Shown here: piece by piece, positions 9,871-45,400 of the stretch
Layout of the letters: every line of letters starts with the position of its first letter
Position numbering within the stretch: the first letter of the stretch is position 1
From: Rebecca billardiae RCC1528
Taxonomy: Eukaryota > Protista > Haptophyta
Length of the DNA stretch: 64,000 nt
Reading direction: 5' to 3'
Assembly (NCBI GenBank): GCA_965240325.2
Contig: OZ251223.1
Location: forward strand, 496,001-560,000
Made by a program: the position numbers and the translations under genes
The notes under the pieces: model-generated
Seen by the model: the letters and a program-made list of their open reading frames with translations, nothing else
Told to the model about the DNA's origin: nothing
Databases searched by the model: none

Positions 9871-9938
9871 TGTCCGTCGACCCCGCGCGATCCGGGATCG
9901 AACAAGCTCAAAGCCGTCCGGTGCAGACCTGCGTCCGG

Positions 9939-18862: not shown

Positions 18863-18896
<34 letters not shown>

Positions 18897-20451
18897 AGGC
18901 GGTGCCGCCGCCGCCGCCACCGCCGGCTTCGGCGGCGGCGGCGGCGGCGCGGCGGCGGAGCGTGGCATGGCGGCGGCCGACGGCGCGGGCGCGGGCGCGC
19001 CCCACGTGCCCTCCCATCGCGCGCACGCCGCCGCCGCCGCCGAGCGCGCGCAGCCGCCGCCGAGCGCGCCCGTGCCGCAGGCCGTCGCCGCGGGCACGTC
19101 CGCCTGGGTCAGCGTGAGTGCGCGCGCGGCCGGCCGACACGACGTTGGCTGCGGCGCGCGAGCGGGCGCGCGCGGCGCGTGCGGCGCGAGCGGGCTGGCG
19201 GCCGCGCGGCCTCTCGGGGCGGTGGCGCTGCCCCCCGCGCCCACGCCGCCGCCTCGCGCCAGCCGAGCCCGCGCGGCGGCCGAGGGCTCGGAGCCCACGC
19301 CCCGCGGCACCGGCGGCGCGCGCGGCGGCGCGGGCGGCGGCGCGGGCGGCGGCGCGGGCGGCGGCGCGGGCGCGTGGGTGGACTTGCCGACGCGGCTGTG
19401 CCGCGCAGCGCCCGCCCAGCCGGGCGGCTGGGCGGCCGCCGACGCGGGAGCGCGCGCCGGCGGCACGCCCGCCGGTGCCGTCTCCGCGGCCGACGGCGCC
19501 ACTCGCTGGCAGCCGCCGACCGCCGCCGCCGTCGCCGCCCTCGCGCGCTCCGGCAGCGAGCGGACTGGCGGCGGCGAGCCGCCTGCGGACCGGAGCGCCG
19601 AGCGCGGCGGCGGCGGCGGCGGCGGCGCGGGCGGCGGGTACGGCGGCGCGGCGGCGCGCTCGCGCGCGCCGCCCGTCGCGACGTGCACCGTCGGCGGCTG
19701 GCTGCTCGTCGCGCGCGGCGACGCGGTCGCCGTCATTCAACCCGCGCCCGCGTGCGCGCCCGCGCGCCGCGCTTACGCCGTGCTGGCGCGGCACTCGGCG
19801 ACACTTGAGCCGACTGTGGTGTGCCGCGCGCTGGGCGCGGCGCTGCTGTGCGCGCCGACGCACCCGCTCGGCGGCGTGTGCACCGCGCTGCGCGAGGCGG
19901 CGGTGCGCGCGTACGCGCAGCTCGACGGCGCCGCCGGCGCCGCCGCCGACGAGCTCGGCGGCGGCGGCGCGGCCGGCGGCGGCGCGGCCGGCGGCGGCGC
20001 GGCCGGCGGCGGCGCGGCCGGCGTCGGCGCGGCCCACGCCGACGCGGACGCGCGCGCGCGCGCGCTCGCCTCCGCCGTCGGCGTGTGCCGCGCCGTGCGG
20101 CGCGAGCTCGCGTGCGCGGTGCGCCTCGAGCTGCGCCACGCGCTGCTGCAGCAGCAGCGCGGCGGCGGCAGCCCCGCCGCGCGCGCCGCCGCGCTCGACG
20201 CCGCCACCTCCGACGCTGTGGAATCCGTTTTGTTCGGCCGCGCGCACGGGCCGTTGCTTGCGCTGTATCGCGCGGCGGACCGCGAGCTGAACGGCGCGTT
20301 CGCGGCGAACCTGGGCCGGCTGCGCGCGCTGCCGGCGGAGGCGTTCGGCGTGAGCGCCGAGGTGCTCGCCGCCGTGCCCGCCGCCGCCGCCGCGCTCGTC
20401 GCCGCGCCCAGCTGGGGCAGCCTGGCTGACGAAGGGCGCTCTGTGGCAGCG

Positions 20452-20485
<34 letters not shown>

Positions 20486-21240
20486 TGTCCGCCTCCGGGC
20501 TGTGCGGGCTCGGCGCGCTCTCGCGCGCGTCGAGCGTGCGCTCGCAGGGCGGCGCGCAGCAGCGCGCCGCGTCGCCGCCGGTGCTCTGCTCCGCGCCCGG
20601 CGTGCCGCCGCCCGTCGGCGCGACGCTGGCGGCGCCGGTGCCGAGGCTGGCATGCGGCGCGTGCGCGCCGCCGCCCGGCGCGGCGGGTCTGTGCGTGCGC
20701 TCGCCGCTCTCGCGCACGCCGTCGTGTGGCGGCGGGTGCAGCGGGTGCGGCTGCGTGCCCGCGGCGGCGGCGGCGGCCCCCGCCGCCTCGCCGCACGCGC
20801 ACGCGCGCGGGCCGGCCCGCCGGCCGCAGCCGCCCGCGCCGCCGCCGCTCGCGCGCGCGCGCACGCAGTCCCCTGCCGCCTACGCGGCTGGCGGCGGCGG
20901 CTTTGGGTGTGGCGGCGGGTGCGCCGCCGGCGCCACGCACGGGAGCTTCGTCAGCGTCGTCGCTGGCGGCGGCGGCCCTTCGCCGCGCACGCGCTCGCCC
21001 GCGTGCTTGGCTGGCGGCGGCGGCGGCGGCGGCGGCGGCGCGCGTGGCACGCCTCCGCCGAGCGCGGCCGAGGCGGCAGTGGCGGCGGCGGCCGCGGCGC
21101 TCGGCACGCTCGGCGCCGCGGCGGGCGGGAGCGGGGCGTGGCCTGCGTGCGCCGCCGGCGCAGCCCTCCCCGCCGCGTCGTACGAGCAGCTCTCGATCTC
21201 CGCCTCTTGCTCCTCGCTGCACGACTCAACCGCCAGCCTC

Positions 21241-21321
<81 letters not shown>

Positions 21322-21506
21322 ATGGCTGACTGGCGCCCCCCGCGGCTCTCGGCGGGGCGGGGCCCGCCGTCGCTCGGCTCGTGCGACTCGGCGAGCCTCA
21401 CGCTCAGCAGCACCACCGACCAGCTCGGCGCGGCCGGCGCCGACGACGCGCTTGGAGGAGGCTGGGGCTCATTCGGCACCGGCCGCGGCCGCGCGCCTCA
21501 AAAGCT

Positions 21507-21539
<33 letters not shown>

Positions 21540-24500
21540 GCGTGCGCAAGTCGTCACGCCGCTTGGGTGCTCGCTCGCGCCGATCGTGACGGCGCTCGCG
21601 CGCGCGCTCGCGCCGCTCCGCCGCGCGCGCACGCCCGAAGAGAAACTCAAGGTGAGTGCCGCGCACGCGCGCGCCGCCGCCGTGGCGCCGCCGCCGTGGC
21701 GCCGCCGCCGCGCGCGCTCGCCGCCGCGCGCGCTCGCCGCCGCCGCGCGCGAGCGGCGCGCACCCTCGCTCACAGCCGCGCCGCGCCGCCCGCTCGCGCG
21801 CGCGCAGGTGGTCGAGCGCGCGTGCGAGGCGCTCACGCGCGCCGTGCACCCGGCCGCGTCGGTTGGCGCGGATGAGCTGCTGCCGCTATGCGCCTATTCG
21901 CTCGTGCACGCGGCGCCGCGGCTGTGTACGGCCGCGGAGGGCAGCGGCGTGCGCGCGCCGTGCGACGGCGGGTGCGACGGCGGCTGCGCGCTGCTCTCGC
22001 ACCTGCGCCTCGTCGCGGACTTCATCCCGCGCTCCGCCAGTGTCAACAGGTGCCGAGCCGCGCCCGCGACCCCGCGCCCGCGACCCCGCCGCCGCCGCGT
22101 GTGCGCCGGCAACCGCCGCCGCCGCCGCCGTCCCGCCGCGTCGCGTCGGGCGCTGAGTGACGCGTGTGCGCCGCCGCCGCCGCCGCCGCGCGCCGCGCGC
22201 AGGGGCGGGTACGCGCTCACCACGCTGCAGGCGGCGGCACTCTTCATCGTCGACGCGCCGCTGCTGCGCGAGGGCGGCGGCGGCAGCGTGGGCGGCGGCG
22301 GCGGCAGCGGCGGCGGCGGCAGCGTCGGCGTAAGCAGCCGCGCATCATCGATGGCGGAGGTGGCGGCGGGCGCTCAACAGCCGGGCGGCGGAGGCGTCCT
22401 CGGCGGCGCCGCCGCGCCGCCGGCCGACGCGCGCTCCTATGCGCTGGCGAAGGCTGTGCCGCGCGCGGCGCACGGCGCGCTTGCGCTCAGCCGCGCGGCC
22501 GCGCCGCCGCCGGGCGCGGCTGGCGCGCCGCCACCGCCCCGCCCCGAGCGCTCCGGCTCGGCGGCGTCGCTCGCGGCGCGCGCGGCGGCGGCGCGCACGG
22601 TGGGCGACTGCCCGCTCGGCGTGCGGCCGCAGCGCTGCTCCGACGGCCGCGTGCTGCGGCGCGGCGACCACATCGCGCGCCTCGTCATCCGCCCGTGGTC
22701 GCGCGTGCCGCTGTGGCATCACGGGATTTATTTCGGCGGGCCGAGCGGTCGCGAGGTCGTGCATTTGGCTCACCACCACGACGGGTGCGAGCCGAGCGAG
22801 GCGGGGACGGACCCGGATGGCTGCTGCTCCGTCGCGCCCTCGTCCAGCGGCGCGGCGCTCGGCGGCGGCGCCGCCGCCGCCGAGCGGCTCGGCGGCGGGG
22901 CATGTAAGCCTACGCTCGCGGCCGCGGCGGCGGCCGCGCGCCACCGCGCCGCCGCCGCGTCCGCCGCCGCGTGCGCCGCGTCGGGCGTCGGCGGCGGCGG
23001 TGGCGCGATCCGCCCGACGTCGAGCGCGGGGCTCGTCGTGTACGCCACGCTTGCCGAGTTCGCCGACGGCGGCCGCGTCGTCCGCATCGACCACGACGCC
23101 ACCGACGGCGTGCACGCTACACTGGAGCGCTCGGCCGCGGCGGTGGGCGCGCGCGCGAACGACCGCGCGCACGTGGCATGCGAGCGCCTCGCGACGTGGT
23201 GCGCGTGCGGCCGCGCGCGCTCGGCGAAGCTCGCGGGCGCGCGCGTCGCGCTGCGCGGCACGCTGCTCGCGCCCGCGCTCGCGGGCGCGCCGCACGCGCT
23301 CAGCGCCGGCGCCGCGCCGCTGCTCGGCGCCGCGCTCGGCGGCGGCGCCGCGCTGAGCGCCCTGGTGGTGGCGGGAGCGGCACTCGCGTCGGCCGGCGGC
23401 GGGCTCGGCGGCTCGCTCGCCGTGCGCGCGGCGCTGCCGTCGGGCGCGCGCGCGCTGCCGCCGGCGGAGCGCGCGGCGCGGCGCGGCGCGGCGACCGCCG
23501 GCGCGCGCGGCGGCGCGCTCGGCGCGCTCGGCGTCGGCACGGCGGTCGCGGCCGCGGGCGCGGCCGCGACCACAACGGGCGCGGCCGCGGCCGGCGGCGG
23601 CGTCGGCGCCGCGCTCGGAGCAGGCCTCGTCGCGCTCGGCGGCTCGGTGGGCGGCGGGCTGCTCGCGGCCAGCCTGCTGCCGTGCTGGGCGGCGATCGCC
23701 GCCGGCTTCGGCTGGTACGGCGTCTCGCGCGCGCACACGCACGTGCAGCGCGCGCGCGGCCGCGCGCTGGTCGCGTGCGCGCGCGCGCGGCCGCGCGCGC
23801 TCGCGCACGCGGGCGCAGCGCACGCGCTCGCCGCGCTTGTGCGCGAGCTCGCGCTGCTTGCGATGGCGCGCGCGTCGCCGCTAGTCTGGTCGCGCGCCGA
23901 GCGCGAGGAGCTGCGCGCCGCGCTCGCGCGCGCGCTCGCGTACGGCGAGGCCTACGCCGCCGACGCCGCCGCCGGCGCGGCCGCCGACGCCGCCGCTCTC
24001 TCATCGCGAGGCTCAAGTCGGCGCTCGGCGGCGCGCGCGGCGCGCGCGGCGGTGGGCGCGGACGCGGCGGTTGCGGCGGCGGTGATGTCGCGCGGCGGCG
24101 GCGGGAGCCCGCTGCTCCCGCCGCCGGGCCAGCACTACCGCCACTGCCAGCCGCGCGCCGACGCGCCGGGCTCGTCCGCCGCCTCCGTCGCCTCGCTCGA
24201 CGGCGGCGGCGCGGGCGGCGCGGGCGGCGACGGCGCGCCGTGGCGCGTGCGCGCGCGCAAGAAGACCGCGGACATCGGCTGGGCGCTCGACATGTGGCTG
24301 AGCTGGGAGCCGGCGACGCCGCAGCTGGGGCGCGCGGCGATGCGCGGCGCGCCGGCGTCGTCGTACGACGAGCTCCGGGCGGACGTGGCCGCCGTGCTCA
24401 GCGCGTGCGCCGCGGGCTTGCTCTTCGAGGAGGGGGGCGGCGGCCATGCTGGCCTGGGCGGCGGCCATGCTGGCCTGGGCGGCGGCCATGCTGGCCTGGG

Positions 24501-24996
24501 CGGCGGCCATGCCGGCCTCGGCGGCGGCCATGCTGCCGGCGCGGCCGCGGACGTCGGCGGCTTGGCGGACGAGGAGGCGGCGGAGGCGGCGGAGCGCGCG
24601 GCCGCTATCCATGCGTGTAAGGAGGCCGTCGTGGGCGCGTGCGAGCTGCTGCGCTGGAGTCCGCACCCGCTCGGCGCGGGCGGCAAGGAGCGCTCGACGC
24701 GGCCGGCGCGCGCCGCCGACGCGCCGCCGCCGACGCGCGCGCCCCCGCCGCGCGCGCGCACCTATGCCCTCCTCGCCGCGCGCACGGTGCGCACGCTCGC
24801 CGACGCGCCCGCGCGCGCGCCGGCCTCGGGCGCGCTCGCGTGCGCCTGTGCGGTCTGCTGCCGCTTTGACGACGTGCGCGCCGCCGCCGCCGCAGAGCCG
24901 GAGCTGATGTGCGCCCTGTGCACGTCGCACCTCGACGGCGGCGGCGGCGGCGGCGGCGGCGGGCCGGGCGGGCTCGAGCGTCTGCTGCAGCGCTGA
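17572..24996 (+). CDS. Giant Gly/Ala-rich protein: CNH/Vps39-like beta-propeller, VPS9 GEF domain, LRAT/NlpC-P60-like domain, Cys-rich C-terminus
   Basis: CNH-like LVVGTAVGRLQCY and PVEQL...LTVHSLPSLEP; VPS9 RTPEEKLK, VGADELLPLCAYSLV, GYALTTLQAAALFI; LRAT GDHI...WHHGIYFG...VVH...ACERLATWC; predicted in-frame introns 21652-21807 and 22050-22202. Confidence 0.75.
21247..21321 (+). repeat. (GGC)n poly-Gly tract, about 25 units
   Basis: Direct reading. Confidence 0.9.
24437..24540 (+). repeat. 21-bp coding minisatellite (GGGHAGL) x ~5
   Basis: Tandem ggcggcggccatgctggcctg units. Confidence 0.9.
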
Positions 24997-26744
24997 GCGC
25001 ACTCCCAGCCGTGAGCGCGGCGGCGGCCCCTGGGAGAAGACAACAGCCCGGCAATGGCCGTGAGCCCGGGGACGGGTGGCTTGGCGCGGGAGGGGGCGCC
25101 GGGGGGCGGCGCGCTGGGCGCGGCCAGGCTGGCGGCACGCGGCTGCAGCGCACGGGGTGCACGACTCGACTCGCAGGCGAGTGGCGCCGACCGAGTTGGC
25201 GACGGGTGTCAGTGGGGATCCCGGTCGGCCCGCAGCATCGGCACAGGCGGCCGGGGCACTACACAGCCCGCTCGGCCCTGGACCGGTGCGGACCGGCGCG
25301 CGCCGGACGGCCCGCGGACACGCAGACAGAGTGAGACGCTGGAGCCGCGCATCAGATGCCCGGCCACTGCCAGAAAACTGAGGCCCGACAGGCAAGTGCG
25401 CTGGCGACAACGGTACACGTCTAGTGTTGGAGTGTGACCGCACGTGTGATGGCTGGTGCAGAGCTACCTGCCGTGACCCCGCCCAAGGGCGGTCCCCGCC
25501 AATGCCAATGGCAGCCAGGCCGTCCAAGACTCCTAAGACGTCGTGAAGTCACAGATCGCAATCTGAATACTCAGAATCTGCAATCTGTTATTGCTCCGGT
25601 TCGGCCGTCTAATACGTCAACCTTGATTTGATGCGTCAAGCCTTTCATATCAATCGATTATGCATGTGCGTCGTTGGACATTATCCGTACAGCGCCGAGA
25701 TTACGCGGGCTCTGCGATCCATGGCGAGCTTGTGACTTGGGGCGGCGACTCGCGCAGCAGTTTGGCCGCTCGATGTACGAGTTCGCGTCCGGACGAGTAC
25801 GCGCGGCATGCAGGCTGCCGCCAGTGGGTACTGGCTACGAGTCCAAGCCCGCATGACCCTCACATCTCGAGTCTGCACCCTGCCGTTCGCTGTGTCAAAG
25901 CAGTCGCAACGCACAAGCGTCGTTGAGTGTCGATCGGCTGCGCGAGCGCGGTCTCGCCCCGCCCAACCCAAGTGTGTGCGAGTGAGCATGTGTCTTGAGC
26001 ATGTGGCGTGCGTTGACGCCATCCGCGACGGCCGACATGGCCATGGAGCGCCCGCATCACTCGCCTGCACCGTGCCCTTCATAGCCTACGGGAAGCTCCG
26101 CAAATCTGTTGATTTTGCTCTTTTTTGCCCGTTGGAGTCATGTTCTTCGCTTGGTTCTTCGTGCACTGAAAACCCTATTTTAAAGAATGAATTTTAGCGC
26201 GCGCGGGCGGCAGCGGAGCGCAACCAACCAGCGGAGTGTCCGAAGGAGATCTCCGAGACGCTAAATGTGAGCCAATTCTTGTCGCCTGCGCACCAACCTT
26301 GCGCCCGGGACCGACCATTAAAGTTGAGTGAGTCTCCCGTGAGTCTCCCGGCGCTGTACGGTTATTGGGCGACGAAGTTTCCCACGCTGAGGCGCTTAAA
26401 CAGCAAGGCAAGATCTGAAGATCAGCAAGATCTCCACTCAACGTACCGCACGCTCATTCGCCCTTCGGGCAATCTGGCTTGAACCGGTATGCCACGGTAT
26501 GAAACATTCTGCAAGGTTTGCGCCGGTAGCGAACCAGCAAGATGAGTCATTAGACCGGGCTTGATGGCTCATCGACGAATGATCGACCTATCGAGTGGTA
26601 GTTCGTTTCAGTAGCGACGCGGTGGGTATTCTCAACCTCGATCAACCAATCGCGTCTTCGAGAGCGCGGGGCTTGTCGATCTCGCGCCTGCCTGGCCAAC
26701 GCTCCCTCCCGTCCGTCGCCTCGCCGCACGCACCCAATCCGAGC

Positions 26745-28796
26745 ATGGGCCACCTGCGCGTGCTCTCCGCGCTCACGCTCCTCGTCGCGCACGCGCACAC
26801 CCACGTCCACGTCGCGCGCTCGCGCGCGCGCTCGGCGGCCGCGCCGCGCCCGGCGGCGCGCGCGCTGCGCGCGCCGGCGCGCGCCGCGCCGCTCGCGGTC
26901 GCCGCCGCGGCGACGGGCGCGCCGTCGCACACGGCGATCGTCGGCGGCGGCCCGGCGGGTCTCGCGACGGCGATCATGCTCGCCCAGCGCGGCTGGACCA
27001 ACATCCACGTGTACGACCGGCTGCCCGCCGTGCCCGCGCCGGACGACGAGCGCGTGTGGCTCGACACAGCGCGCGACCGCTTCTACCTGATCGGCCTCGG
27101 CGGGCGCGGGCAGGAGTCGCTGCAGGCGCTGGGCGTGTGGGACGCCGTCGCGCCGTACACCACCACCGTCGTCGGCCGCCGCGACTGGGCCCCCGGAGAC
27201 GCCCCCGACGGCGGCGCCGAGCGGATCTTCACCGCGGCCGACCGCAAGTACATGTCCGCCGTGATCGCGCGCGACCGGCTCGTCGGCGCGCTCGACCGCG
27301 CGGTGGCGGAGCGGTACGGCGAGGCGGTGACGGTGCACCACGGCGTCGAGTGCGCCAGCGTGCAGTGGGACGCGGCGGGCGAGGCCGCCACCCTCCGCCT
27401 CCGCGCCGACGACGGCGCCGAGACGGACGTGACGACCGAGCTGCTCGTCGGCGCGGACGGCGCGGCGCGCGGCGTCGCCTCGGCGATGGCGGCGGCGAGC
27501 GAGGGCTTCCACGTGGTGCGGTACGAGGACGACAACGCGAAGGTGTTCAAGACGCTGCCGATGTCCCTCCCGCCCGACTGGCGCCCCGACCTCAACTACG
27601 CCGCGCGCACCGCCGACGGGCGCGTGTACATGGACGCGTTGCCGCGCGCAGACGGCGGCCGCTACTGCGGCGTGCTCATCCTGCGGGCAGACGACGAGCT
27701 CGCGCAGCCGAGCTCGGCGGCGGCGCTGCGCGCGCTGCTCGACGAGGCGGTGCCGCAGTTCTCCGCGTGCATCGACGACGACGCCGTCGCGCACGCCGCC
27801 GCCCGCCCCGCCCACCGCCTGCCCAACTTCCGCGCCGTCGCGCCGACGCTGCACCACGGCAGCGTCGCGCTCATGCTCGGCGACGCGATCCACACGGTGA
27901 AGCCCTATTTTGGCATGGGCGCCAACTCGGCGTTCGAGGACGTGATCGTGCTGCGCGACGCGCTGGACGGCGCGGCGGCGGCCGGCGCGCCGCTCGGCGC
28001 CGCGCTCCCCGCCTTCTCCGACGCGCGCGCCGCCGACGCGCGCACGCTCGTCCGGCTCTCGCGCGACCTCGACCGGCCGGGCGTCGCCGGCGCGTTCACG
28101 TTTATTATCCCCGTGATTTTGGACGCGATCTTCCACCGGCTGGCGCCGCGGCTGTTCGCGCCGTCGACGATCCTGATGCTGCAGCGCGAGGGTGTCTCGT
28201 ACCGCGACGTCGCCGCGCGCAAGCGCCAAGACCGCGCGCTCCAGCTCGTCGTGCTCGCCGCCGCGCTCGGCGCGGCCGGGCTCGCCGCGCGCGCCGCGCT
28301 CGGCGCGGCGGCGAGCGCGCTGCGAGCGCCCGCGGCCGCGCTGCTCGGCGCGGTCGCGCGCGCCGTGGGCGGGGCGGGCTCGACGCAGCTGGCGGCGAGC
28401 GCCGCGGCGCCGATCGCCCTCGGCGGCGCCATGGCCGCCTGCGCGGCCGTGGGCGTGCTGCGCGCGGCCGCGGCCGAGCGCAGCGCGGCGGCCGGCGGCG
28501 GCGCGCTCGCCGCCGCGCCGGCGAGCGCGCCCGCGACGAGCGGCGCGCGCCGGAGCGCTGCCCCGCTCGGCTCGGCCGCACGAGACGCGCACATGGCGCG
28601 GCGCCAGCACGATCGGCAGCGCGCGCCGCGGCAGCACCTCGTCTCCGCCCGCGCCTCCGCGGCCCGCATGAACGCGGGCGATCGCCCTTCGCGGGCCGGC
28701 GAAGCGCAGGCCGACGAGTCGGCCGCGGCGGCGGGCCCGGCGGTCGATCGCCGCCGCCGCCGGGGCCCGCCCGGCGACAGCGTCGGCCATTGCTGA
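26745..28796 (+). CDS. FAD-dependent monooxygenase (kynurenine 3-monooxygenase-like) with bipartite targeting presequence
   Basis: IVGGGPAG FAD motif, LLVGADG, LGDAIHTVKPYFGMGANSAFED; signal-like MGHLRVLSALTLLVA followed by an Arg/Ala/Pro transit-like region; hydrophobic C-terminal segments. Confidence 0.85.
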   Translation: MGHLRVLSALTLLVAHAHTHVHVARSRARSAAAPRPAARALRAPARAAPLAVAAAATGAPSHTAIVGGGPAGLATAIMLAQRGWTNIHVYDRLPAVPAPDDERVWLDTARDRFYLIGLGGRGQESLQALGVWDAVAPYTTTVVGRRDWAPGDAPDGGAERIFTAADRKYMSAVIARDRLVGALDRAVAERYGEAVTVHHGVECASVQWDAAGEAATLRLRADDGAETDVTTELLVGADGAARGVASAMAAASEGFHVVRYEDDNAKVFKTLPMSLPPDWRPDLNYAARTADGRVYMDALPRADGGRYCGVLILRADDELAQPSSAAALRALLDEAVPQFSACIDDDAVAHAAARPAHRLPNFRAVAPTLHHGSVALMLGDAIHTVKPYFGMGANSAFEDVIVLRDALDGAAAAGAPLGAALPAFSDARAADARTLVRLSRDLDRPGVAGAFTFIIPVILDAIFHRLAPRLFAPSTILMLQREGVSYRDVAARKRQDRALQLVVLAAALGAAGLAARAALGAAASALRAPAAALLGAVARAVGGAGSTQLAASAAAPIALGGAMAACAAVGVLRAAAAERSAAAGGGALAAAPASAPATSGARRSAAPLGSAARDAHMARRQHDRQRAPRQHLVSARASAARMNAGDRPSRAGEAQADESAAAAGPAVDRRRRRGPPGDSVGHC

Positions 28797-29850
28797 ATGC
28801 TCCCGTCGGGCCGCAGGCGCACATAGCATTGCCATGCTTACGTCACAGAGGCCGCGGCGTTGCAAGGACCGTGCTGCTAGTCTTAGTAGTCTTGGTCGTG
28901 AGTCACCGATCATGTGCCATCCCGCGGAGATTACGGATTTACGGTGAAACCGCGTCCGCGAGACTGTTGATCTCAGTTCGGAAACTTCGGATGCCAGTTT
29001 TTTTTATGATGGCGGTTCGTCATGCTCTTCCAAATGGAATCCCAATATGGGGGTATTATGAAACGGCGGCGCATAAAAGACGATCCATTTTGAAGATTGG
29101 TTGAAGAGGTTTGAACACGGTTGCGTCGAGTCAATTACAAGGGTGTTTTAAATACGAATCATGATTGATGGGTGCGTGCGCGGGGTCACGGGGTGGTTTG
29201 CACCCGGCCGCTCGTCGCCTAGGTGGTGAGTACTGCAGGGATGAAGCAAATGAAGTGCCAAGCGACGTCTGGGGTAATTCGCATAGCAGAAAATCAAGCG
29301 CCAAGCGACGTCAGGAGTACTCGCAGGTTGACGACGGCATCATCATGCTGAACCCTGGTTTCGGCATAACCCGCCTTACGCCGCAGGAGCGGCGTGAATC
29401 TCGACGCAAAATAACCGAAACACAACGCTACGCGAGTTTTCGAGGGTTTTTAAACTTTTTTGTTGGAGGCGGTGTTTGCACCCGGCGCATCAATAATCTC
29501 CGAATCTGGAGTACAAGATCATCCAATTCATGGTTGAGCAAGCGACATACCCGCTCGTGTTTGATTACGGTTCAGTTAACCATGATGGCAATCTCGGCGA
29601 ACCTCGAAGCTGGTCTCGGCCTTTTCGGCCCACTCAGATTCGTCTGCGGGCGTGTGAGCTCACTCTGAGACGACGATCCCCCGTGATGAGGGCCTGCATA
29701 AACGCGCCGATTGGCTCAAGGAGATTCTCTCACCCTCCCAACAACCTTTTTGGAGCTTCGAGGGCCGTGCGCACGCGCTCCCCACACCCCCGCCCGCCGG
29801 TAAGGGGGTTATACCTTGCCCACCTGGCGCCGCCGCCGCGTCCATTGGGG

Positions 29851-30968
29851 ATGCTGCGCTCGCGCGCTCGAGGCCAGGGCGCTGGGGTGGTGCTCGTCTG
29901 CTCGCCCGGGGCCGACCCGTCCGATGTGCAGACGCTCCTCACCGCGGGGGTGCTCCACCAGCAGGGCGAGATCCGGCTGGCGGGCGTGATTGCGTCCGGC
30001 GGCGCTCGTCACGCCCAGGTCGCGCGGTGCGTGCTCGACCGTCTGGGGGCGCGTGATGTACCGGTGGGTGTCGGCGCGAAGGGCGACGGCCCGCCGCCGC
30101 AGCCCCAGCCGCACGAGTTCCGCCTGCCCGGCGTCGACGCGGTCGACGTGCTCACGCTCCGCCACGGCGGCCGGCTGCTCGCGTCGCTGCTCGAGGCCGC
30201 GCCGGAGCGCGGGCTGACGATCGTGTGCATCACGGCGATGCGCGACCTCGCGGACGCGATCAGCGCGTCGCCCGAGCTCTTCCGCGCCAAGGTCGCCGAG
30301 CTCGCCGTGCAGGCCGCCGTCGAGCGCGACGCGGCCAAGGGCGCGTGGGTCCCTGACTCGTCCGCCAACAACACGCTCGACGTCGCGGCCGCGACGGCGG
30401 TGTACGACTTCTGCCTCGAGTCGCGCGTGCCGCTCGCGCTGATGAGCCGCGAGGCGGTGCCGCTGCTGCCCATGCAGCTCGCCGCCTCCTTCGCCGCGCG
30501 CACGCGCGACCCGCTGCTCGCGTACGTCGCCGAGGCGCAGCCGGCGTCGCTGCGCGCGCTCTGGCAGCGGCTGTGCGCGGGCGAGCTGCCCGCGCGCTGC
30601 ACCAAGGCGTGGTTCGTCAAGACCTTCTGCGGGAGCGCGGCGTCGAAGCTGGGCGAGGACGGCGTCGAGGCGCTCGGCGCCGACGACGACATCGGCGCGC
30701 GGCTCGCCGGCCTCAAGCCGTACGGCGTTCTCACGCTCATGTCTGTGCTGCCGCGCACGCGCAACCTCTTCCCGCCGTCTGAGCCGGTCGTCGACCGCGC
30801 GCACCGCTTCTACGTGCGGCCGAAGCACGCGGTGGACGACGCGCACGTGCTCAAGCTGATGCGCGACACCTACCACGGCGCCGTCCTCGCCACCGCCGAG
30901 GCGCTCGCGCCGCCGCGCAAGTCGATGCTCGGCGCGGTCGGCGCGTTGCTCGGTGGGCTCGTCGGCGC

Positions 30969-31003
<35 letters not shown>

Positions 31004-33384
31004 GTGGTGGCGGCAGCAGCAGCCACAGCGGCCGCGCGCGCGCCATGCAGCGCCAAGGCCTCACCTCGCGCGCGCTCCGGCAGACGCACCAGCTCTCCGC
31101 CGAGTCCAACCTCGGCGAGGTCTCCTCCAAGCGCACCGTCTCGTCGGGCTCGTCGGAGTCGATCTCGCTCGCCGACGAGCCGACGGCGGAGAAGCCTCAG
31201 CCGCAGCAGCAGCAGCAGCTCATGCAGCAGCAGCAGGGCGGCCCGGCGGCGGCGCAGCTGGGCGAGCAGGGCGCCGGCCTCGTCGGCACGCTCGAGACCG
31301 CCCTCGCCGAGGCCTCCCTCCGCCAGTGGCAGGTCTCCATCCCGCTCTTCTCCATCGGCCTCGCCGTGATTGCAACCTCGGCGCACCAGCAGCTGCACAC
31401 CAACGTGTCCCCCGAGTGGGCGACCGACGCCAACGTGACAATCCGCTCGGACATGTTCGCGCTGCTGTACCTGATGGGGCTCTCGCTGCTGATGCTCGCG
31501 CTCCAGCCCACGCGCACCTTCCTCGGCCTCGTCCGCGTCGCCGCCGCCGTCATCGCCGCCGTGTACACCATGGGCCTGCTCATGGCTGTCGGCGGCTTTG
31601 GCGCCAAGTTCCTGCGCACCTATGCGCTCACGCGCTCGCTCTCGCAGTCCCTGCAGTGGGAGGCGTTCGTCGTGGTCTCGATGCTGGGCGGCTCGCTCGC
31701 GTTCGTGGGCCGCGCGCTGCGCAAGCACTGGCGCTCCGTCCACGACCTCACCTTCGCCCTCTTCCTCGTCGTCGGCGTCGCGTCGGGCTCTGAGGTGCTC
31801 GTCGTCATCATCCGGCGCACGCTCCTCGGCTGGACCTCGGGCTCGCGCGGCCTGCCGCTCGCCGCGACGACGCTCGCGCGCACGGTGCTCAAGGGCGCGC
31901 TGTCGGGGCTGCTGCTCTGGCCGCGCTTCCGCGCGCACGTCCACGTCTTCTTCGGCCGCTGCGTCCGCGCCGTGAGCAGCACGCGCCTCGCCGAGCTCGC
32001 GCCGCTCGCACCGCTGATCGGCTTTGGGACTCTGCACCAGGCCGTCCCTGAGAAGCTTGTCGCCGGCGCGGCCGCGGTGTTCGCGCCGGTCGCGCTGAGC
32101 GAGGAGGCGCTGAAGGAGCTCACGGTGGCGTGGGAGGAGGGCAAGACGAGCGGCGCCGCGCCCGAGCCCGCCGCCGCCGCCGAGGCCAAGCCGCTCCGCA
32201 CCGTGCGCGAGAACAGCTCGGCCGACGGCGCCGGCGCGGCCTACGTTGTGCACGCGGCCGCCGACTCCGCCGCCGCCAAGGTCGACGCGCTCCGCGCGTG
32301 GGCGTCGAAGCAGTCGGCGCCGCCGACGGTGTGGATCGAGCCGCTCTGCGCCGACCTCTCGCTCTTCCCGCACGAGCAGGTCCACCACGAGCTCGTCACG
32401 CTCGCGCTCTGCCCCAAGCTGCTCCTGCTCGCCGGGCCGGCGCTGCCTGACTCGCTGCAGTGCGTCTCGCAGCTGCACGCGTGGACGTGTCTCGGCCGCT
32501 CGCTCGACGACGTGGAGGTGGTGCTCGCGGTGCCGGAGGGCGACGAGGCGGGCGAGCAGGCGACGCTCGCGGCCTTCGACACCTTCGCCGTCATGTACGC
32601 CTCGGCCACGCGCTCCGAGTACGAGCAGGCCATCTCCCACTCCGTCGAGCTCGCGACCGCCTCCGCCTACAACGAGGCGGTGCACTCGGTCGTGCCTCTC
32701 ATCCGCGCGGCCATCAACAAGCGGCGCGCGGGCAGCGAGACGCTCTCGCGCTCGCCGTCGGTCGCCGACTCGCTGTGCGCGTCATCCGGCGCGCCGTCGG
32801 CCAGCCCCTCCGACCTCGACGACCTCGACGAGGACATCGCCGAGATCGAGGCGGCGGAGGTTCGCGCGGCGGCGGGCGCGGCCGCCGAGGCGCGCGCCGC
32901 GGCCGCGGCCGTGGCGACCGCCGAGCCGGCGCCGCTGCTGCATCTGCACATCGGCCGCGCGCACTCGCACTCCGACGAGTCGCCCTCGGTCGACGACACG
33001 GTCGGCTCGTTCGATGAGGAGGACGAGCCCATCTTCGTCGCGTACGCGAAGCGCGCCGACGTGGCCGCCGCGATGAGCGCCGCGTTCAAGCTGCCCTACC
33101 AGCTGCCGGCGTCGGGGCCGTTCCGCCCGTCCGTGCGTGCCGCCGCCGACGCGCTCGTCGAAGCGCTGGCCGGCGCGTCGGGCGCGAGCGACGAGCACGC
33201 GCCGTTCGACCTCTCGATGCTCGCCTCGGGCGGCTTCGCCCCGCCGCCGCGTCGCCGCGAGTACGCCACGCCCACGAGCAGCGGCGCCCTCCTCGCCCCC
33301 GACGTTCTCTCCACGTGGGCCGAGGACGCGCGGCGCTTGCACTCGGCCGCCGCGGCCGCGCCCCTCCCCGTGCCGTGCGCCTAG
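29851..33384 (+). CDS. XopQ/HopQ1-like nucleoside-hydrolase-fold domain, ~6 TM helices, degenerate TIR-like domain
   Basis: NH fold about 29887-30895 (CSPGADPSD, VARCVLDRLGARDVPVGVG, VPDSSANNTLDVAAA, LPARCTKAWFVKTFC, PYGVLTL); TM block about 31327-31925; TIR-like about 32236-32715 (AYVVH..D, VWIEPLC, CPKLLLLAGP..DSLQCVSQL); intronless. Confidence 0.75.
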
Positions 33385-33802
33385 GCGGCGGCGTGGGCCC
33401 TGCCTTGTCCTCTTCTTCGCATGTTTTTCTACCGGCGTCATCCACGCGCTGCGTTTGGTCTGCCCGGCAGCACTCGCGCACGACGGCGCACCACGCGCCC
33501 GCGGCCGCTGCCACATCCCGGCTCGAGGCACCCCCATGTCGTCGCACCCGCAACCCACGTCCACGGTCCAGTCACCCCGGCATGTACTCCGTCCCGAGCA
33601 TGTACTGCAGGCGCATCGCCTGATGACCAGCTTCCGCTCCCCACATTCGGCACCATGCCGCATCTCCCATCGCGGCACATGCGCTCCTCTGAGTCTCGCT
33701 CGGACCTGCATTTCATATTTTATAAAAACAATTGTATTTAAGCTGCTCAATATTATTATTATAATAATAATGATATATATATATTATTTATTTATTTAAC
33801 GG

Positions 33803-34935
<1,133 letters not shown>

Positions 34936-35300
34936 GGTCGTAGTACGCGTCGCCGCGCGCCGGCCAAGCGCCAAGCGGCGCGCAGCTATATATATATGGC
35001 GATATATTAACGACGTGGTATGCAACAGGCAGGCGTCAGAGTCAGCAAGCTGTAGCAGCAGATCGAGCAGCAGAGACAAACACCAGGATCAGCGCTCCTC
35101 GCCGCGTCGTCCCCCCGCCCCCCCCCCCCCTCACGTGGCCCTCGTCCGGCGTCCGCGCCAGTCGCCCCCGGATCATCCGGGCTGACTCCGACCCGTTGCA
35201 CGGGTGAGTGACCGTAGGGCGGTGAAAATGCGACGTACCGGTGAAAATACGGTTTTGCAACTAGCGCTGGGCGATGGCTGCCGGGCGCGACGAGCCGAGC

Positions 35301-41355: not shown

Positions 41356-42220
41356 ATGTATGGCGACGGCGATATCGCGGGGATGGATGACGGGCTAGGC
41401 GACTCGTCGGCGTCTGCGCGGCTGAGTAGTGCCTTCGGCCGCAGGTTGCAGCACTACCTCGACAAAGCTGCTCCGCACACCACGGCGCGATGGATTGGGG
41501 CCGCCGTTGTGACGCTGCTCTACTGCATCCGTGTGTACCTGCTGAACGGCTGGTACATTGTGACGTACGGGCTGGGCATCTACCTGCTGAACCTGCTGAT
41601 TGCGTTCCTGTCTCCGCAGGTGAGAGCTCCGCCCCCGCTCGACCTGCCCGCCTCGACCTGCACCGCGCGCTCACGCGCGCACCCCGATTCGCGCGCTCTG
41701 CTCAGATCGACCCTGAGATGGAGGGTCCAACGCTGCCGTCGTCACGGGAGGACGAGTTCCGACCTTTCCAAAGGCGACTTCCGGAGTTCAAGTTCTGGTG
41801 CGCCGCTCGGCGCCGTGCGCGCACCTGCGGCTGCTTGTCCTCAACAGCCGCGCCGCGAACTCCACTGCGCCGCGCCACGGTGCGCGCAGGTATTCCTACG
41901 TCAAGGCCTTCCTGACAGCCATGTGCATGACGTTCTTCGAGCTCTTCAACATCCCGGTCTTCTGGCCGATCCTGCTGCTGTATTTCATCACGCTCTTCTG
42001 CCTCACGATGAAGCGCCAGATCAAGCACATGATCAAGTACAGGTGCGCTGCTGGCGAACCGCGCGCGCACTCCAGCTTGAGCAGGCGCTCATCACGTGCC
42101 CCCGCGACCTCTGCCGCCCTTCCAATGTGGGCTGCCGCGAGCAGGTACGTGCCCTTCTCGTTCGGCAAGGCGCGCTACAAGAGCAAAGAGGGGGAAGCTC
42201 CATCTGGACGAGACAAGTAA
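41356..42220 (+). CDS. RER1: Rer1 Golgi-to-ER retrieval receptor
   Basis: [72 protein letters not shown]; introns 41620-41705, 41798-41889, 42043-42144. Confidence 0.97.
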
Positions 42221-43008
42221 GCCGCACACGTCGATCATGGGCGAGCCTGCGACGCGGCTCGGAGCGGCTCGGAGCCGGAGGGTGCATGGTGCAGTTGCCC
42301 GCTTGGCAGGCGTTGCCGCTCGAGCGCCATGTCGGCTGCGGGCAGCGCGCGACGCCCTGCCCTCGCGGTGCTGGGTGGGACGGGGAAGTCCAGCCAGCGA
42401 GACACCGTGCCTGTAAGCAGACGTGGGTGCCAATTGCTTCTGTCCAGTGCCGCCTGCGGCACGACCGCACGAGTATCATTTCGCATTTGATCGCTCGGAC
42501 TCACTCACGGACTAACGAGCGGTGTCACTCCGACTCCTGACGAACGGCTGAACGACGGGCGACGGCAGACCGCCAGATGACGTGAGACGGACCCTGCCGG
42601 TTGTCCGTCGACGCTCGCCGGCCGGCCCGGGCGCTGGCCGATCCGCGCGAACGCGCTGGCAGCGGACGGCTGCTAACGGTCGCTGCGGCGGACCGCGGCC
42701 GCGCGGGCCGGGCACCGGTGCGGCTCGGTCGGACCTACTGATTACTCGGGTACGCGGACCGGTACGGTTCAGAATGATACTCGCGGACCGCGGGCGCGGT
42801 AGACGGCGGTACTGTTCCAGTGCGGCCAGTGCCGCTCGGCCGCCGGGAGCCTCACTCAGTCAGGGCGGTGCCCTCGGCGGATCGTAGGCGTAGCTCACTC
42901 CTGACTCTGACTCGGAGAGTCACACTCACTTAACTAGAGTGAGTGTCTAGACGGTGGCAGGCACTGTCGCGCGGGCAATCAGACTTGAGTCAGAGATCTC
43001 ACGGCGCT

Positions 43009-43925: not shown

Positions 43926-44706
43926 TGATCCGCAGATAGCAAGCCCCCGTAGTTAGCCTTAACGTTGACGATCAGACAGCTCCTTACAGCGTACATATAT
44001 AATTATTGCCCGCGATCAGCCTCGCGGCGGTAGGGCCGGTACATAGCTAGGCTGTAGCCAGACTAGAGTGTAGGTAGGTCTACTCGCTAGACAGAGTCTC
44101 GGAGTACGGGACCGACTCGCCGGACCGACGCGGGTACTTTTGGCGTGGTCCGACGCTGCCGCCAGTGCCGCCATCAGACCAGTCGGCCTGATCTAACAGA
44201 CACACTATAGATTCCGTCGGCGTCCGCGCCGAATAATTAATAATTAATAATTACAATAAATATCTGACTCCGATGCACAACTTGCCACGGACAATGGGCT
44301 GCGGATCACTACTGATTTCCGACAGACTCGGAGGGGCGCGCTTAACTTAATCGGCATCGATGAAACCGGCCGGCGACAGCACTGCTCAAATCTGAAGTGC
44401 GGCGCCGGCGCGCCGCGCGCGGGCAGATGCCCGAGGCCGAGACGGCGACGGTCAGAGAACTCGTCTCCGATTCTCGAAGTCGAACGGACTTCCCAGGACC
44501 GTCTCCCATGCCGCCGCTCGCGCCTGCGGCCCCGGAGACCCCGGATGCCTGGCCCTCACAGGCGCAGCAGTCGAACGACCGGGCCGCCTCCGCCAGACCG
44601 AGCCAACGCTGCGATCTCGTTCACGCTCATCAACCCGCACAGATAGACGGGGCCTGGCCCGCGCGTCTGCAGCGCGAGCCCCGCGCGCACCCCACTGCAC
44701 ACACGC

Positions 44707-45400
44707 TTAGTTCGTGATGGGGAACTCGAAGGCCACGTCCTTTCCTGTCAGCTGCTTGTACACAGTGCCGAAAGTTTCCAGCTTGTACTCGACGTTCGCG
44801 GCCTCCTTCGGGTTGAGGTAGCTGCGCACGCAGGCAGCGGGCCAGGGTGGCGGCGCGCGTGAGGGCGCGCCCGCTCGCTCTCGTGCACGCACCGGCACGG
44901 CGCGGGCCAGGCGCCGCGCGCGCGCGGTGCGCCGCGCACATTTTGAGCAGCTTCGTGCCATCCGTCTTATAGCGCATGTGCTTCCCCACAATCTCCGTCG
45001 GGTACACCAGATCCTCCAAGATCGCATCGTGCACCGCGGTGAGCGTGCGGCTGCGCGGCCGCTTCTGCGCGAGCATGCGCCCCGCCTTCGTCTCCTTGCG
45101 CTGGATACGGCGCTGCGCAATCAGCACAACGTGGCGGCCGGAGAACTTCTTCTCGAGCTCGCGCACAAGCCGCGACTGGATCTTGTGCGTCAGCTTGAGC
45201 AGGCGGAACGGCACGAAGATGACGACAGCCTTCCGGCCCTGCACGTCAACCTCCTTTGCGGCGACGATGAAGAGCTCGCGCAGCTCGGCCTTGAGGTCCG
45301 CGCTGTTCGCCTCAAGATCGCTCAGCGCCTGCGCCACCTCCAGCTCGAACGGGCTGGGCTCGGCGGCGCCCTTCTCCTTCTGGATCTTGCTTGCCGCCAT
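44707..45400 (-). CDS. RPS7: 40S ribosomal protein S7 (eS7)
   Basis: [64 protein letters not shown]; intron 44822-44939. Confidence 0.98.

What the first reader, a model, noticed from the sequence alone, without database searches (positions are those of the whole stretch)
29851..33384. XopQ/HopQ1-like domain fused via ~6 TM helices to a TIR-like domain: candidate nucleotide-messenger receptor
Seen: an intronless ORF with an N-terminal nucleoside-hydrolase-fold domain, a Gly/Gln linker, about 6 hydrophobic helices and a C-terminal alpha/beta domain patterned like protist TIR-like domains (AYVVH..D, VWIEPLC, CPKLLLLAGP, LQCVSQL). Known: the motif order of the NH domain (blocks such as PDSSANNTLDVAAA.AVY, LRALWQ, WFVKTF, KPYGVLTL) matches my recollection of the Xanthomonas XopQ / Pseudomonas HopQ1 type III effectors better than IunH/Rih enzymes. 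XopQ binds ADP-ribose, is reported to hydrolyse TIR-made 2',3'-cNMPs and is detected by the TIR-NLR ROQ1. Inference: an even TM count would put both domains in the cytosol. Both look catalytically eroded (the Asp box reads CSPGADPSD; the TIR catalytic Glu position reads Gln), which suggests a pseudoenzyme sensor or scaffold, or a ligand-gated membrane effector, in an algal TIR/NAD-derived signalling or defence pathway.
Basis: partly seen in the sequence, partly recalled or inferred. Interest (0 to 1): 0.9.

Follow-up and report, generated by a model that had tools for sequence, protein, structure and literature searches.

The report
Algal XopQ-like hydrolase–membrane–TIR fusion protein
This is a real single-exon algal gene for a six-helix membrane protein that joins a XopQ/HopQ1-type nucleoside-hydrolase domain to a TIR immune-signalling domain. 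This copy has lost the catalytic residues of both domains, whereas most of its relatives keep them, which points to an undescribed TIR-nucleotide signalling module in haptophyte-like algae.

Summary
ATG 29851 to stop 33384 (+) is one open frame of 1177 codons. GC3 is 0.96 in every segment, and full-length homologues reach E 1e-164.

- **N-terminal domain (residues 13-345):** it matches only XopQ structures in the PDB (E 1e-24) and the NCBIfam XopQ model, not Rih/IunH.
- **Membrane part (residues 482-689):** six hydrophobic helices (AF2 pLDDT 92), with no fold match in the PDB.
- **C-terminal domain (residues 796-964):** it models at pLDDT 94.7, and nearly all of the top 50 structural hits, including the best 44, are TIR domains, at modest scores.

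The gene belongs to a family. Of 151 representative relatives of the C-terminal domain, 25 share the hydrolase-membrane-TIR architecture. The named ones are from Diacronema lutheri and Pavlovales sp.

Most members keep the HopQ1-type DXXXDXDD box, the second catalytic Asp and the TIR Glu. The window copy and three orthologue-like relatives have lost both sites but stay 41-52% identical in every domain.

Best reading: intact members make and clear a TIR-derived 2'cADPR-like signal. This copy would be a conserved non-catalytic paralogue acting as sensor, regulator or scaffold. The anatomy is shown; the function is inferred. I found no paper describing this fusion.

The parts
29851..33384 (+). 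Whole gene: single open frame of 1177 codons plus stop; apparently one exon
   Evidence: GC3 is 0.96 across the ORF against 0.61 upstream, and the ORF is far longer than any in shuffles. It is colinear with P0001 and P0002.
29887..30885 (+). N-terminal XopQ/HopQ1-like (HLP-clan) nucleoside-hydrolase-fold domain, residues 13-345
   Evidence: The only significant PDB hits with a meaningful name are XopQ chains 4kl0, 4p5f and 7jlu, E 2.6e-24 to 1.3e-22, covering query residues 14-328. NCBIfam XopQ scores E 3e-28, 98.7 bits. Pfam IU_nuc_hydro scores only 26.8 bits, below its cut-off of 34.2.
29902..29925 (+). Position of the HLP-type calcium/catalytic Asp box (residues 18-25). It reads S-x3-D-x-S-D where most relatives read D-x3-D-x-D-D
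   Evidence: Alignment to XopQ chains. Column counts in A2: the first Asp is present in 13 of 18 sequences, the second in 16 of 18, the third in 17 of 18 and the fourth in 13 of 18. The motif definition comes from PMC11685791.
30724..30726 (+). Gly292, at the column of the second catalytic Asp of XopQ (the D399 of the preprint's inactive double mutant)
   Evidence: The register comes from the alignment. Asp occupies this column in 20 of 26 family members and Gly, Ser or Ala in 6. The mutant data are in 10.64898/2026.06.15.732069.
30886..31293 (+). Low-complexity Gly/Ser/Gln-rich linker, residues 346-481, not conserved
   Evidence: Alignment A1 shows length variation and no conservation. It is still coding-like, with GC3 0.94.
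31294..31917 (+). Six-helix membrane bundle, residues 482-689
   Evidence: AF2 model m58301bb3e4d5 (pLDDT 92.3, pTM 0.86) has helices 482-519, 527-550, 555-594, 603-625, 630-659 and 668-689. Six family-mean hydropathy peaks coincide with them. There is no significant PDB fold match.
31918..32148 (+). Conserved juxtamembrane segment, residues 690-766: an amphipathic helix plus a Leu-Ala-Pro-Leu-x-Gly-x-Gly block that precedes the TIR domain across the family
   Evidence: Conserved columns 717-749 in the 56-sequence alignment A4. Many hits align from query position 6-10 onwards. It is modelled as helices with high confidence.
32149..32235 (+). Short variable linker, residues 767-795
   Evidence: pLDDT dips to 56-75 here. 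Its length varies in A1.
32236..32742 (+). C-terminal TIR-superfamily domain, residues 796-964
   Evidence: AF2 model mf8b82b48bab6 has pLDDT 94.7 and pTM 0.89, with alternating strands and helices. The Foldseek PDB top 44 hits are all TIR domains: E 0.013-0.3, probability up to 1.00, TM 0.35-0.51. The best viral hit is a TIR/WD40 protein. The profile-vs-PDB hits are TLR15, SIGIRR and 4lzp.
32455..32475 (+). Helix alpha-C motif, residues 869-875. Gln870 sits at the family's Trp column and Gln874 at the TIR catalytic-Glu column
   Evidence: The register comes from the profile alignment to the TLR15 TIR. Column counts: Glu in 95 of 151, Leu in 14 and Gln in 12; Trp in 75 of 152.
32743..33381 (+). 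Low-complexity acidic/Ala-rich tail, residues 965-1177, with two short blocks shared only with the closest relatives
   Evidence: Invariant E-P-x-F and A-P...R-R columns among the window, P0002, P0012 and P0016. No Pfam hit.

Best explanation
**Anatomy (shown).** This is a nuclear, single-exon gene of a high-GC eukaryotic alga, most likely a haptophyte related to Pavlovophyceae. It encodes a 1177-aa protein with six membrane helices. The N-terminal domain belongs to the HopQ1/XopQ-like clan of nucleoside hydrolases and the C-terminal domain to the TIR superfamily. There is no signal peptide and the helix count is even, so both domains should face the cytosol.

**Family mechanism (inferred).** In the majority of members, which keep both active sites, the TIR domain would convert NAD+ into a cyclic ADP-ribose-type signal. 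The XopQ-like domain in the same polypeptide would open and inactivate that signal. The protein would then be a membrane-anchored make-and-break module with a built-in off switch.

**The window copy.** It belongs to a clade that has replaced three of the five key Asp residues of the hydrolase and the TIR Glu, yet keeps all domains well conserved. I therefore read it as a non-catalytic paralogue. It would still fold, probably still bind the nucleotide and/or co-assemble with active paralogues, and would act as a sensor, regulator or scaffold rather than as an enzyme.
For: **Shown**
- The ORF is real and coding.
- The NH domain matches XopQ chains only and the XopQ NCBIfam model.
- The TIR fold is supported. 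Relatives P0013 and P0168 are named 'TIR domain-containing protein' by UniRef, and 7 of 55 relatives give weak TIR_2 hits.
- Six helices are supported.
- The hydrolase-membrane-TIR architecture recurs in 25 of 151 representatives, including a transcript-derived ORF (P0007).
- Active-site counts: complete DXXXDXDD box in 13 of 18, second Asp in 20 of 26, TIR Glu in 16 of 26.
- The window groups with P0002, P0012 and P0016, all lacking both sites, at 41-52% identity in every domain.
- Pavlovales sp. CCMP2436 encodes both an eroded member (P0002) and an intact one (P0028).

**From the literature**
- XopQ is a specific, near diffusion-limited 2'cADPR hydrolase, and the D120N and D399N changes inactivate it (10.64898/2026.06.15.732069).
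- The HLP clan, with its DXXXDXDD motif, includes algal proteins (PMC6019455, PMC11685791).
- Multi-TM TIR genes are induced in virus-infected Gephyrocapsa huxleyi (PMC12489294).
Against: - No activity or ligand was measured for any family member.
- The product of these algal TIR domains is unknown.
- The TIR structural matches are uniform but weak (best E 0.013, TM about 0.5). No Pfam TIR model reaches threshold on the window protein.
- The Asp equivalent to XopQ D120 is retained, so residual hydrolase activity cannot be excluded.
- The link between loss of the two sites (5 of the 6 members lacking the second Asp also lack the Glu) may reflect one or two ancestral events rather than coupling.
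- The topology is deduced from helix count, not measured. The loop charges do not give a clean positive-inside pattern.
- The organism is not identified.
Confidence: 0.45

Rival explanations
1. Ligand-gated membrane effector. The dead hydrolase domain senses a cyclic ADP-ribose-type signal made by other TIR proteins, and the six-helix bundle, perhaps after TIR-driven oligomerisation, opens or perturbs the membrane. This would resemble the membrane effectors of bacterial nucleotide-signalling defence systems.
For: - A nucleotide-binding fold without catalytic residues is what a sensor would look like.
- The bundle and the juxtamembrane segment are confidently modelled as one unit with the TIR domain, pTM 0.86.
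- The TM-TIR module also occurs without the hydrolase domain in many relatives.
- Type VI Thoeris uses 2'cADPR to trigger an effector (10.64898/2026.06.15.732069).
Against: - The bundle has no significant fold match to any channel or transporter; the best E is 0.33, with scattered GPCR and ZnT hits.
- No polar or charged residue in the helix cores is conserved across the family.
- Most family members keep an active-looking hydrolase. A hydrolase would destroy the ligand, which does not fit a gate.
Confidence: 0.2
2. Still a working enzyme. The hydrolase, the TIR domain or both remain active using the retained Asp22/Asp25 or alternative residues, so this copy does the same chemistry as its intact relatives.
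For: - The Asp at the column of XopQ D120, the single residue whose change abolishes activity in the preprint, is retained, as is the fourth Asp of the box.
- The hydrolase domain is the best-conserved part against intact members, at 41-51% identity.
Against: - Three of five key Asp columns are Ser, Ser and Gly, including the D399-equivalent position.
- The TIR Glu column is Gln and the preceding Trp column is Gln.
- The closest relative P0002 has in addition a deletion of about 47 residues inside the hydrolase domain within a continuous ORF. That suggests catalysis is not what this clade conserves.
Confidence: 0.15
3. Ordinary membrane-anchored nucleoside-salvage hydrolase that happens to carry an unrelated alpha/beta domain, with no link to TIR signalling.
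For: There is a weak Pfam IU_nuc_hydro match, E 5e-6.
Against: - No Rih/IunH/UriH model or structure is hit by the window domain at E up to 1 or 10, whereas XopQ scores 98.7 bits and E 1e-24.
- The motif type in the family is DXXXDXDD, not the canonical DXDXXXDD.
- The C-terminal domain is TIR-like.
- The fusion recurs in 25 representative clusters.
Confidence: 0.05
4. Decaying gene: a pseudogene or a chance open frame in very GC-rich DNA.
For: - Both active sites are eroded.
- Long spurious ORFs are common here; for example, the antisense strand carries a 958-codon ORF.
Against: - The frame has GC3 0.96 with a sharp boundary at the ATG, whereas the antisense ORF has the mirrored pattern.
- There are no stops in 1177 codons.
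- AF2 confidence is 92-95.
- Identity to three relatives is 41-52% in every domain.
Confidence: 0.05

Closest known systems
XopQ / HopQ1 type III effectors and the HopQ1-like protein (HLP) clan of nucleoside hydrolases
   Same: - The N-terminal domain aligns over the whole nucleoside-hydrolase fold with XopQ structures (E 1e-24).
- Most relatives carry the clan's DXXXDXDD motif and the second catalytic Asp.
- An algal HLP clade has been known since 2018 (PMC6019455).
   Different: - It is not an orthologue of the bacterial effector: 98.7 bits against a cut-off of 500.
- It is a eukaryotic nuclear gene, not secreted, and fused to six membrane helices and a TIR domain.
- This copy lacks three of the five key Asp residues.
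- No XopQ or HopQ1 sequence was fetched; likeness rests on search-tool hits only.
Enzymatic TIR domains (plant TNL/TIR-only proteins, SARM1, bacterial Thoeris ThsB, SPARTA TIR-APAZ)
   Same: - The fold matches.
- The beta-A and beta-C/alpha-C motifs are in register with TIR structures.
- The family's Trp-Cys-x-x-Glu-Leu block carries a Glu at the catalytic column in 63% of members.
   Different: - The domain is very divergent: no Pfam TIR hit on the window protein and Foldseek E only about 1e-2.
- It has family-specific conserved Asp and Asn in the C-terminal helices.
- It is attached to a six-helix bundle.
- Glu is replaced by Gln in this copy.
Multi-pass membrane TIR proteins of Gephyrocapsa (Emiliania) huxleyi induced during EhV infection
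   Same: They have several N-terminal membrane helices followed by an intracellular TIR domain in a haptophyte (PMC12489294).
   Different: That paper reports no hydrolase fusion in its main text. Its TIR domains keep the Glu. Whether they belong to the same TIR subfamily was not tested, because its supplement is not held.
Fungal HET domain (a TIR-related cell-death domain)
   Same: It has a three-block motif pattern resembling that of the more canonical family members, and 4 of 55 relatives give weak Pfam HET hits (best E 0.014).
   Different: TIR_2 hits are more frequent and stronger (7 of 55, best E 0.001). The window protein itself hits neither. No solved HET structure appeared among the fold matches.
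Bifunctional second-messenger enzymes (GGDEF-EAL proteins, RelA/SpoT)
   Same: This is a functional analogy only: a signal-making and a signal-breaking domain sit in one polypeptide, and there are frequent paralogues in which one or both sites are degenerate and serve as sensors.
   Different: There is no sequence or fold relation. The analogy rests on established knowledge of those families and is inference here.

Membership tests
HopQ1/XopQ-like (HLP) clan of nucleoside hydrolases | Sequence closer to XopQ/HopQ1 than to canonical IunH/Rih hydrolases | tested here: met
   The PDB phmmer search returns XopQ chains only among real hits, E 2.6e-24 to 1.3e-22. NCBIfam XopQ scores E 3e-28, with no Rih/UriH model at E up to 1.
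HopQ1/XopQ-like (HLP) clan of nucleoside hydrolases | Modified calcium-binding motif DXXXDXDD (PMC11685791) | tested here: not met
   The window reads S-x3-D-x-S-D at residues 18-25. Thirteen of the 18 relatives that cover this region have the full motif.
HopQ1/XopQ-like (HLP) clan of nucleoside hydrolases | Second catalytic/calcium Asp (equivalent of XopQ D399) | tested here: not met
   The window has Gly292. Asp occupies this column in 20 of 26 family members.
HopQ1/XopQ-like (HLP) clan of nucleoside hydrolases | Curated model thresholds (NCBIfam XopQ equivalog 500 bits; Pfam PF01156 34.2 bits) | tested here: not met
   98.7 bits and 26.8 bits. It is a homologue, not an equivalog of the bacterial effector.
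HopQ1/XopQ-like (HLP) clan of nucleoside hydrolases | Specific hydrolysis of 2'cADPR to ADPR | not testable with these tools
   Known for bacterial XopQ only (10.64898/2026.06.15.732069).
TIR domain superfamily | Flavodoxin-like alpha/beta fold that matches solved TIR domains best | tested here: met
   pLDDT 94.7. PDB ranks 1-44 are all TIR domains, with probability up to 1.00, but E is only 0.013-0.3 and TM 0.35-0.51. The best BFVD hit is a TIR/WD40 protein.
TIR domain superfamily | Sequence-profile membership (Pfam TIR, TIR_2) | tested here: inconclusive
   There is no hit on the window domain. TIR_2 hits 7 of 55 relatives at best E 0.001. The family profile hits the TLR15 TIR at E 0.011, in register. 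UniRef names two relatives as TIR.
TIR domain superfamily | Catalytic Glu on helix alpha-C (enzymatic TIRs) | tested here: not met
   The window has Gln874. Glu occupies this column in 95 of 151 family members.
TIR domain superfamily | NAD+ cleavage or cyclic ADPR-isomer production | not testable with these tools
HET domain (PF06985) | Pfam profile match | tested here: inconclusive
   Four of 55 relatives hit weakly (best E 0.014). The window protein gives no hit.
Known ion channels or transporters (for the six-helix bundle) | Fold or sequence match to a solved membrane protein family | tested here: not met
   The best Foldseek E is 0.33, with heterogeneous hits. There is no Pfam hit and no conserved polar residue in the helix cores.

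The most novel reading that the evidence does not exclude
Haptophyte algae run an endogenous TIR-nucleotide (2'cADPR-like) signalling pathway. Its synthase (TIR) and its XopQ-type hydrolase are fused across a dedicated six-helix membrane module, and a conserved doubly inactive paralogue, the window gene, serves as the pathway's receptor or regulator. If so, the XopQ-type activity that plant pathogens inject would be a copy of a eukaryotic signal-terminating enzyme rather than a bacterial invention.
Probability: 0.3. Interest if true: 0.85.

Novelty: new variant of a known kind. Interest (0 to 1): 0.74.

Why it matters
XopQ was shown only in 2026 to be a dedicated hydrolase of the TIR product 2'cADPR. 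A recurrent natural fusion of a XopQ-type domain with a TIR domain is independent genomic evidence, of the guilt-by-fusion kind, that the two activities act on the same molecule.

The fusion also extends that chemistry to haptophyte-like algae, where TIR genes have only just been linked to virus resistance. It gives a concrete, sequence-defined family in which signal making, signal clearing and non-catalytic sensing can be compared among paralogues. It also bears on where the XopQ/HopQ1 clan came from.

The six-helix bundle and its conserved juxtamembrane segment form a membrane module with no known structural relative.

Tried and rejected
- **Single-sequence searches of the C-terminal domain:** Pfam and PDB gave nothing. 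Only the exhaustive representative search opened up the family.
- **Word-indexed protein searches:** the hydrolase domain alone and the family profile returned only 7 and 4 hits. They added one further Diacronema lutheri relative (P0181) and no new taxa. The candidate lists were probably swamped by low-complexity words.
- **Fold search of the TM+TIR model:** no significant match for the bundle.
- **Positive-inside analysis of the loops:** not decisive.
- **Literature:** searches for a described hydrolase-TM-TIR fusion found nothing. The supplement of PMC12489294 that lists G. huxleyi TIR architectures is not held.
- **Region 17-25.5 kb:** a tandem-repeat scan found nothing.
- **Rejected readings:** an ordinary IunH enzyme, a pseudogene, and two separate genes (see the rival explanations).
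- **Left out on purpose:** fetching XopQ or HopQ1 sequences for a direct alignment or tree, because injected effectors of crop pathogens may not be fetched as comparators. The pieces of the second, probably spliced, hydrolase gene at 58.8-63.7 kb were searched separately and not joined.
Full report

Yes. The + strand carries an open frame whose conserved part starts at ATG 29851 and ends at the stop 33382-33384, giving 1177 aa. The window is 63-84% G+C, so long chance ORFs are common; the antisense strand carries a 958-codon ORF. I therefore tested coding character directly.

- GC at third codon positions is 0.92-0.97 in each of the six segments of the protein. In the in-frame stretch 29530-29850 immediately upstream it is 0.61.
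- The antisense ORF shows the mirrored pattern.
- The longest stop-free run in 200 shuffles of 28001-35000 was 676 codons, against 1295 observed.

The uniform GC3, which includes the Gly/Gln linker and the tail, argues for one exon.

The neighbours are ordinary eukaryotic genes: DENN, ammonium transporter, Rer1, ribosomal protein S7e and TCP-1. This is therefore nuclear DNA of a eukaryote. It is not human-like and not viral.

**2. The N-terminal domain**

- A search of all PDB sequences with residues 1-400 returns three strong hits, and all three are XopQ: 4kl0, 4p5f and 7jlu, E 2.6e-24 to 1.3e-22. They cover residues 14-328 of the query and the whole hydrolase fold of XopQ.
- No IunH, Rih or other canonical nucleoside hydrolase appears even at E up to 10.
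- NCBIfam gives the XopQ model at E 3e-28 and no Rih/UriH model. At 98.7 bits it is far below the 500-bit equivalog cut-off.
- Pfam IU_nuc_hydro scores 26.8 bits, under its threshold of 34.2.

So the domain is a homologue within the XopQ/HopQ1-like clan and not an orthologue of the bacterial effector. That clan (HLP) was defined in 2018. It is known to include algal proteins and is marked by a DXXXDXDD calcium-binding motif instead of the canonical DXDXXXDD (PMC6019455; PMC11685791).

I did not fetch any XopQ or HopQ1 sequence. The comparison rests on what the search tools returned.

**3. The C-terminal domain**

Alone it hits nothing in Pfam or the PDB. An exhaustive HMMER scan of 1.84 billion representatives with residues 710-965 found 250 relatives at E up to 1e-3, and 98 at E up to 1e-10. 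Most carry the domain at the C-terminus of proteins of 450-1500 aa.

With 54 short relatives as the alignment, AlphaFold2 models residues 790-960 at mean pLDDT 94.7 and pTM 0.89, as an alternating strand-helix domain. Several lines place it in the TIR superfamily:

- Foldseek against the PDB puts TIR domains at ranks 1-44: SPARTA TIR-APAZ, RPP1, SNC1, RUN1, RPV1, SARM1, AbTir, TLR10, TLR15 and MyD88. Probabilities reach 1.00, but E-values are modest (0.013-0.3) and TM-scores are 0.35-0.51.
- Against viral models, the best hit is a TIR/WD40 protein of Tetraselmis virus 1. It is followed by nucleoside 2-deoxyribosyltransferases, a fold related to TIR.
- A profile of the family hits TIR chains in the PDB (TLR15 at E 0.011, SIGIRR, 4lzp) in the expected register: strand A, then strand C plus helix C.
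- Seven of 55 relatives give weak Pfam TIR_2 hits and four give weak HET hits.
- UniRef names two Diacronema lutheri relatives 'TIR domain-containing protein'.

I conclude that it is a divergent TIR-superfamily domain. The refutation criterion 'does not model as a TIR fold' is not met.

**4. The membrane part**

AlphaFold2 on residues 481-965, with 55 relatives, gives pLDDT 92.3 and pTM 0.86. It shows six long helices: 482-519, 527-550, 555-594, 603-625, 630-659 and 668-689. These are followed by an amphipathic helix and a conserved juxtamembrane segment that leads into the TIR domain.

- Hydropathy averaged over the family alignment shows six peaks (1.55-2.02) on exactly these helices and none on the seventh.
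- In the window sequence alone, helices 1 and 6 are weak.
- The hydrolase fold begins at residue 13, so there is no room for a signal peptide.
- With six passes, both domains lie on the same, presumably cytosolic, side. This is inferred and was not measured.
- The loop charges are not decisive. The loop between helices 1 and 2 carries two N-x-S/T sequons, which fits an outside loop.
- The bundle has no significant structural match (best E 0.33, heterogeneous hits). It also has no polar residue in its helix cores that is conserved across the family.

**5. The family changes the picture**

Of the 151 representatives, 25 also contain the XopQ-like domain, giving the same hydrolase-TM-TIR order. 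The rest are TM-TIR proteins with other or no N-terminal domains, or fragments.

Named members come from Diacronema lutheri and Pavlovales sp. CCMP2436. One is an MMETSP transcript (P0007) whose single ORF spans all three parts. P0001 sits on a 4-kb contig with short flanks and one continuous ORF. The 'two separate genes' refutation is therefore not supported in relatives.

Counts in the 26-sequence alignment:
- 13 of the 18 sequences that cover the site have a complete DXXXDXDD box.
- 20 of 26 have Asp at the column of XopQ D399.
- 16 of 26 have Glu at the TIR catalytic column. Across the whole TIR-like family the figure is 95 of 151.

The window protein has Ser, Asp, Ser, Asp in the box, Gly at the second Asp column, and Gln at both the Trp and the Glu columns of helix C. 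Its closest relatives by the membrane region are P0002, P0012 and P0016 (44-49% identity there). They share the loss of both sites and remain 41-52% identical to it in the hydrolase and TIR domains. P0002 additionally lacks about 47 residues inside the hydrolase domain, within a continuous ORF.

These four also share two short blocks in the otherwise low-complexity tail. Pavlovales sp. CCMP2436 encodes both an eroded member (P0002) and an intact one (P0028).

Loss of the two sites goes together: 5 of the 6 members without the second Asp also lack the Glu, against 5 of the 20 that have it. Because the sequences are related, this may reflect only one or two events.

**6. How it most likely works**

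A 2026 preprint shows that XopQ is a near diffusion-limited and highly specific hydrolase that opens the TIR product 2'cADPR to ADPR. It is inactive on 3'cADPR, canonical cADPR, pRib-AMP and 2',3'-cNMPs, and is inactivated by D120N alone or together with D399N (10.64898/2026.06.15.732069).

A recurrent fusion of this type of hydrolase with a TIR domain, both cytosolic on one membrane anchor, is most simply read as a make-and-break module for a TIR-derived cyclic ADPR-type signal. This is inference, by analogy with bifunctional second-messenger enzymes.

The window copy keeps fold and sequence conservation but not the catalytic residues of either domain. I therefore read it as a conserved pseudoenzyme: a ligand sensor, a regulator or a scaffold that may co-assemble with active paralogues, since TIR domains act as oligomers. 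I give that mechanism about 0.45, and the anatomy about 0.9.

The rivals are:
- a ligand-gated membrane effector (0.2), weakened by the featureless bundle;
- residual enzyme activity (0.15), because the D120-equivalent Asp is retained;
- a salvage hydrolase (0.05);
- a decaying gene (0.05).

**7. Comparison and novelty**

Each domain belongs to a known kind. The algal HLP clade was known (PMC6019455), and multi-pass membrane TIR proteins induced by virus infection were reported in Gephyrocapsa huxleyi (PMC12489294).

I found no paper that describes the hydrolase-TM-TIR fusion or its doubly eroded clade. The library searched is incomplete, so this is absence of evidence only. I rate it a new variant of a known kind.

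**8. Limits**

- The organism is unidentified. The only named relatives are pavlovophyte haptophytes, at 33-52% identity.
- There is no expression, activity, ligand or localisation data.
- The TIR assignment rests on consistent but weak scores.
- Steps left out: fetching XopQ or HopQ1 comparators, and joining the pieces of the second hydrolase gene.

Noticed in passing
window 58784-63659, minus strand: A second XopQ/HLP-like nucleoside-hydrolase gene, about 25 kb downstream on the opposite strand. From a Met at 63659 it has a signal-peptide-like start, an acidic run, one membrane helix, and then a hydrolase domain with an intact-looking D-x3-D-x-D-D box (NCBIfam XopQ E 1.7e-13). The domain continues in other frames, so introns are probable. 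The 1021-codon ORF 58784-61849 carries a further weak XopQ-like segment (E 4e-5). No TIR-like part was found there. The pieces were searched separately and not joined.
   Followed up: partly
window 17224-24996, plus strand: A 2590-codon open frame in the 83% G+C region. It is 25% Ala and 17% Gly, with GC3 0.93. It has a sub-threshold VPS9 match near residues 1521-1566 and a short run of an eight-residue Gly/His-rich repeat near the C-terminus. No tandem DNA repeat reaches score 200.
   Followed up: partly
window 7807-10200 (-), 10788-12917 (+), 41356-42537 (+), 44633-45622 (-), 45801-47753 (+): The flanking ORFs carry DENN, ammonium transporter, Rer1, ribosomal protein S7e and TCP-1/cpn60 domains. 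This shows an ordinary eukaryotic nuclear context around the gene.
   Followed up: partly
window 26550-28913, minus strand: A 787-codon ATG ORF lies immediately upstream of the gene on the opposite strand. It has no Pfam match. Whether it is a real divergently transcribed neighbour was not examined.
   Followed up: no
L001 (Pavlovales sp. CCMP2436, MU631406.1) 6001-10086: The annotated gene for P0002 spans 4086 nt for 1073 aa, so it has introns, whereas the window gene appears intronless. Its hydrolase domain lacks about 47 residues relative to the window protein within one continuous tblastn segment.
   Followed up: partly
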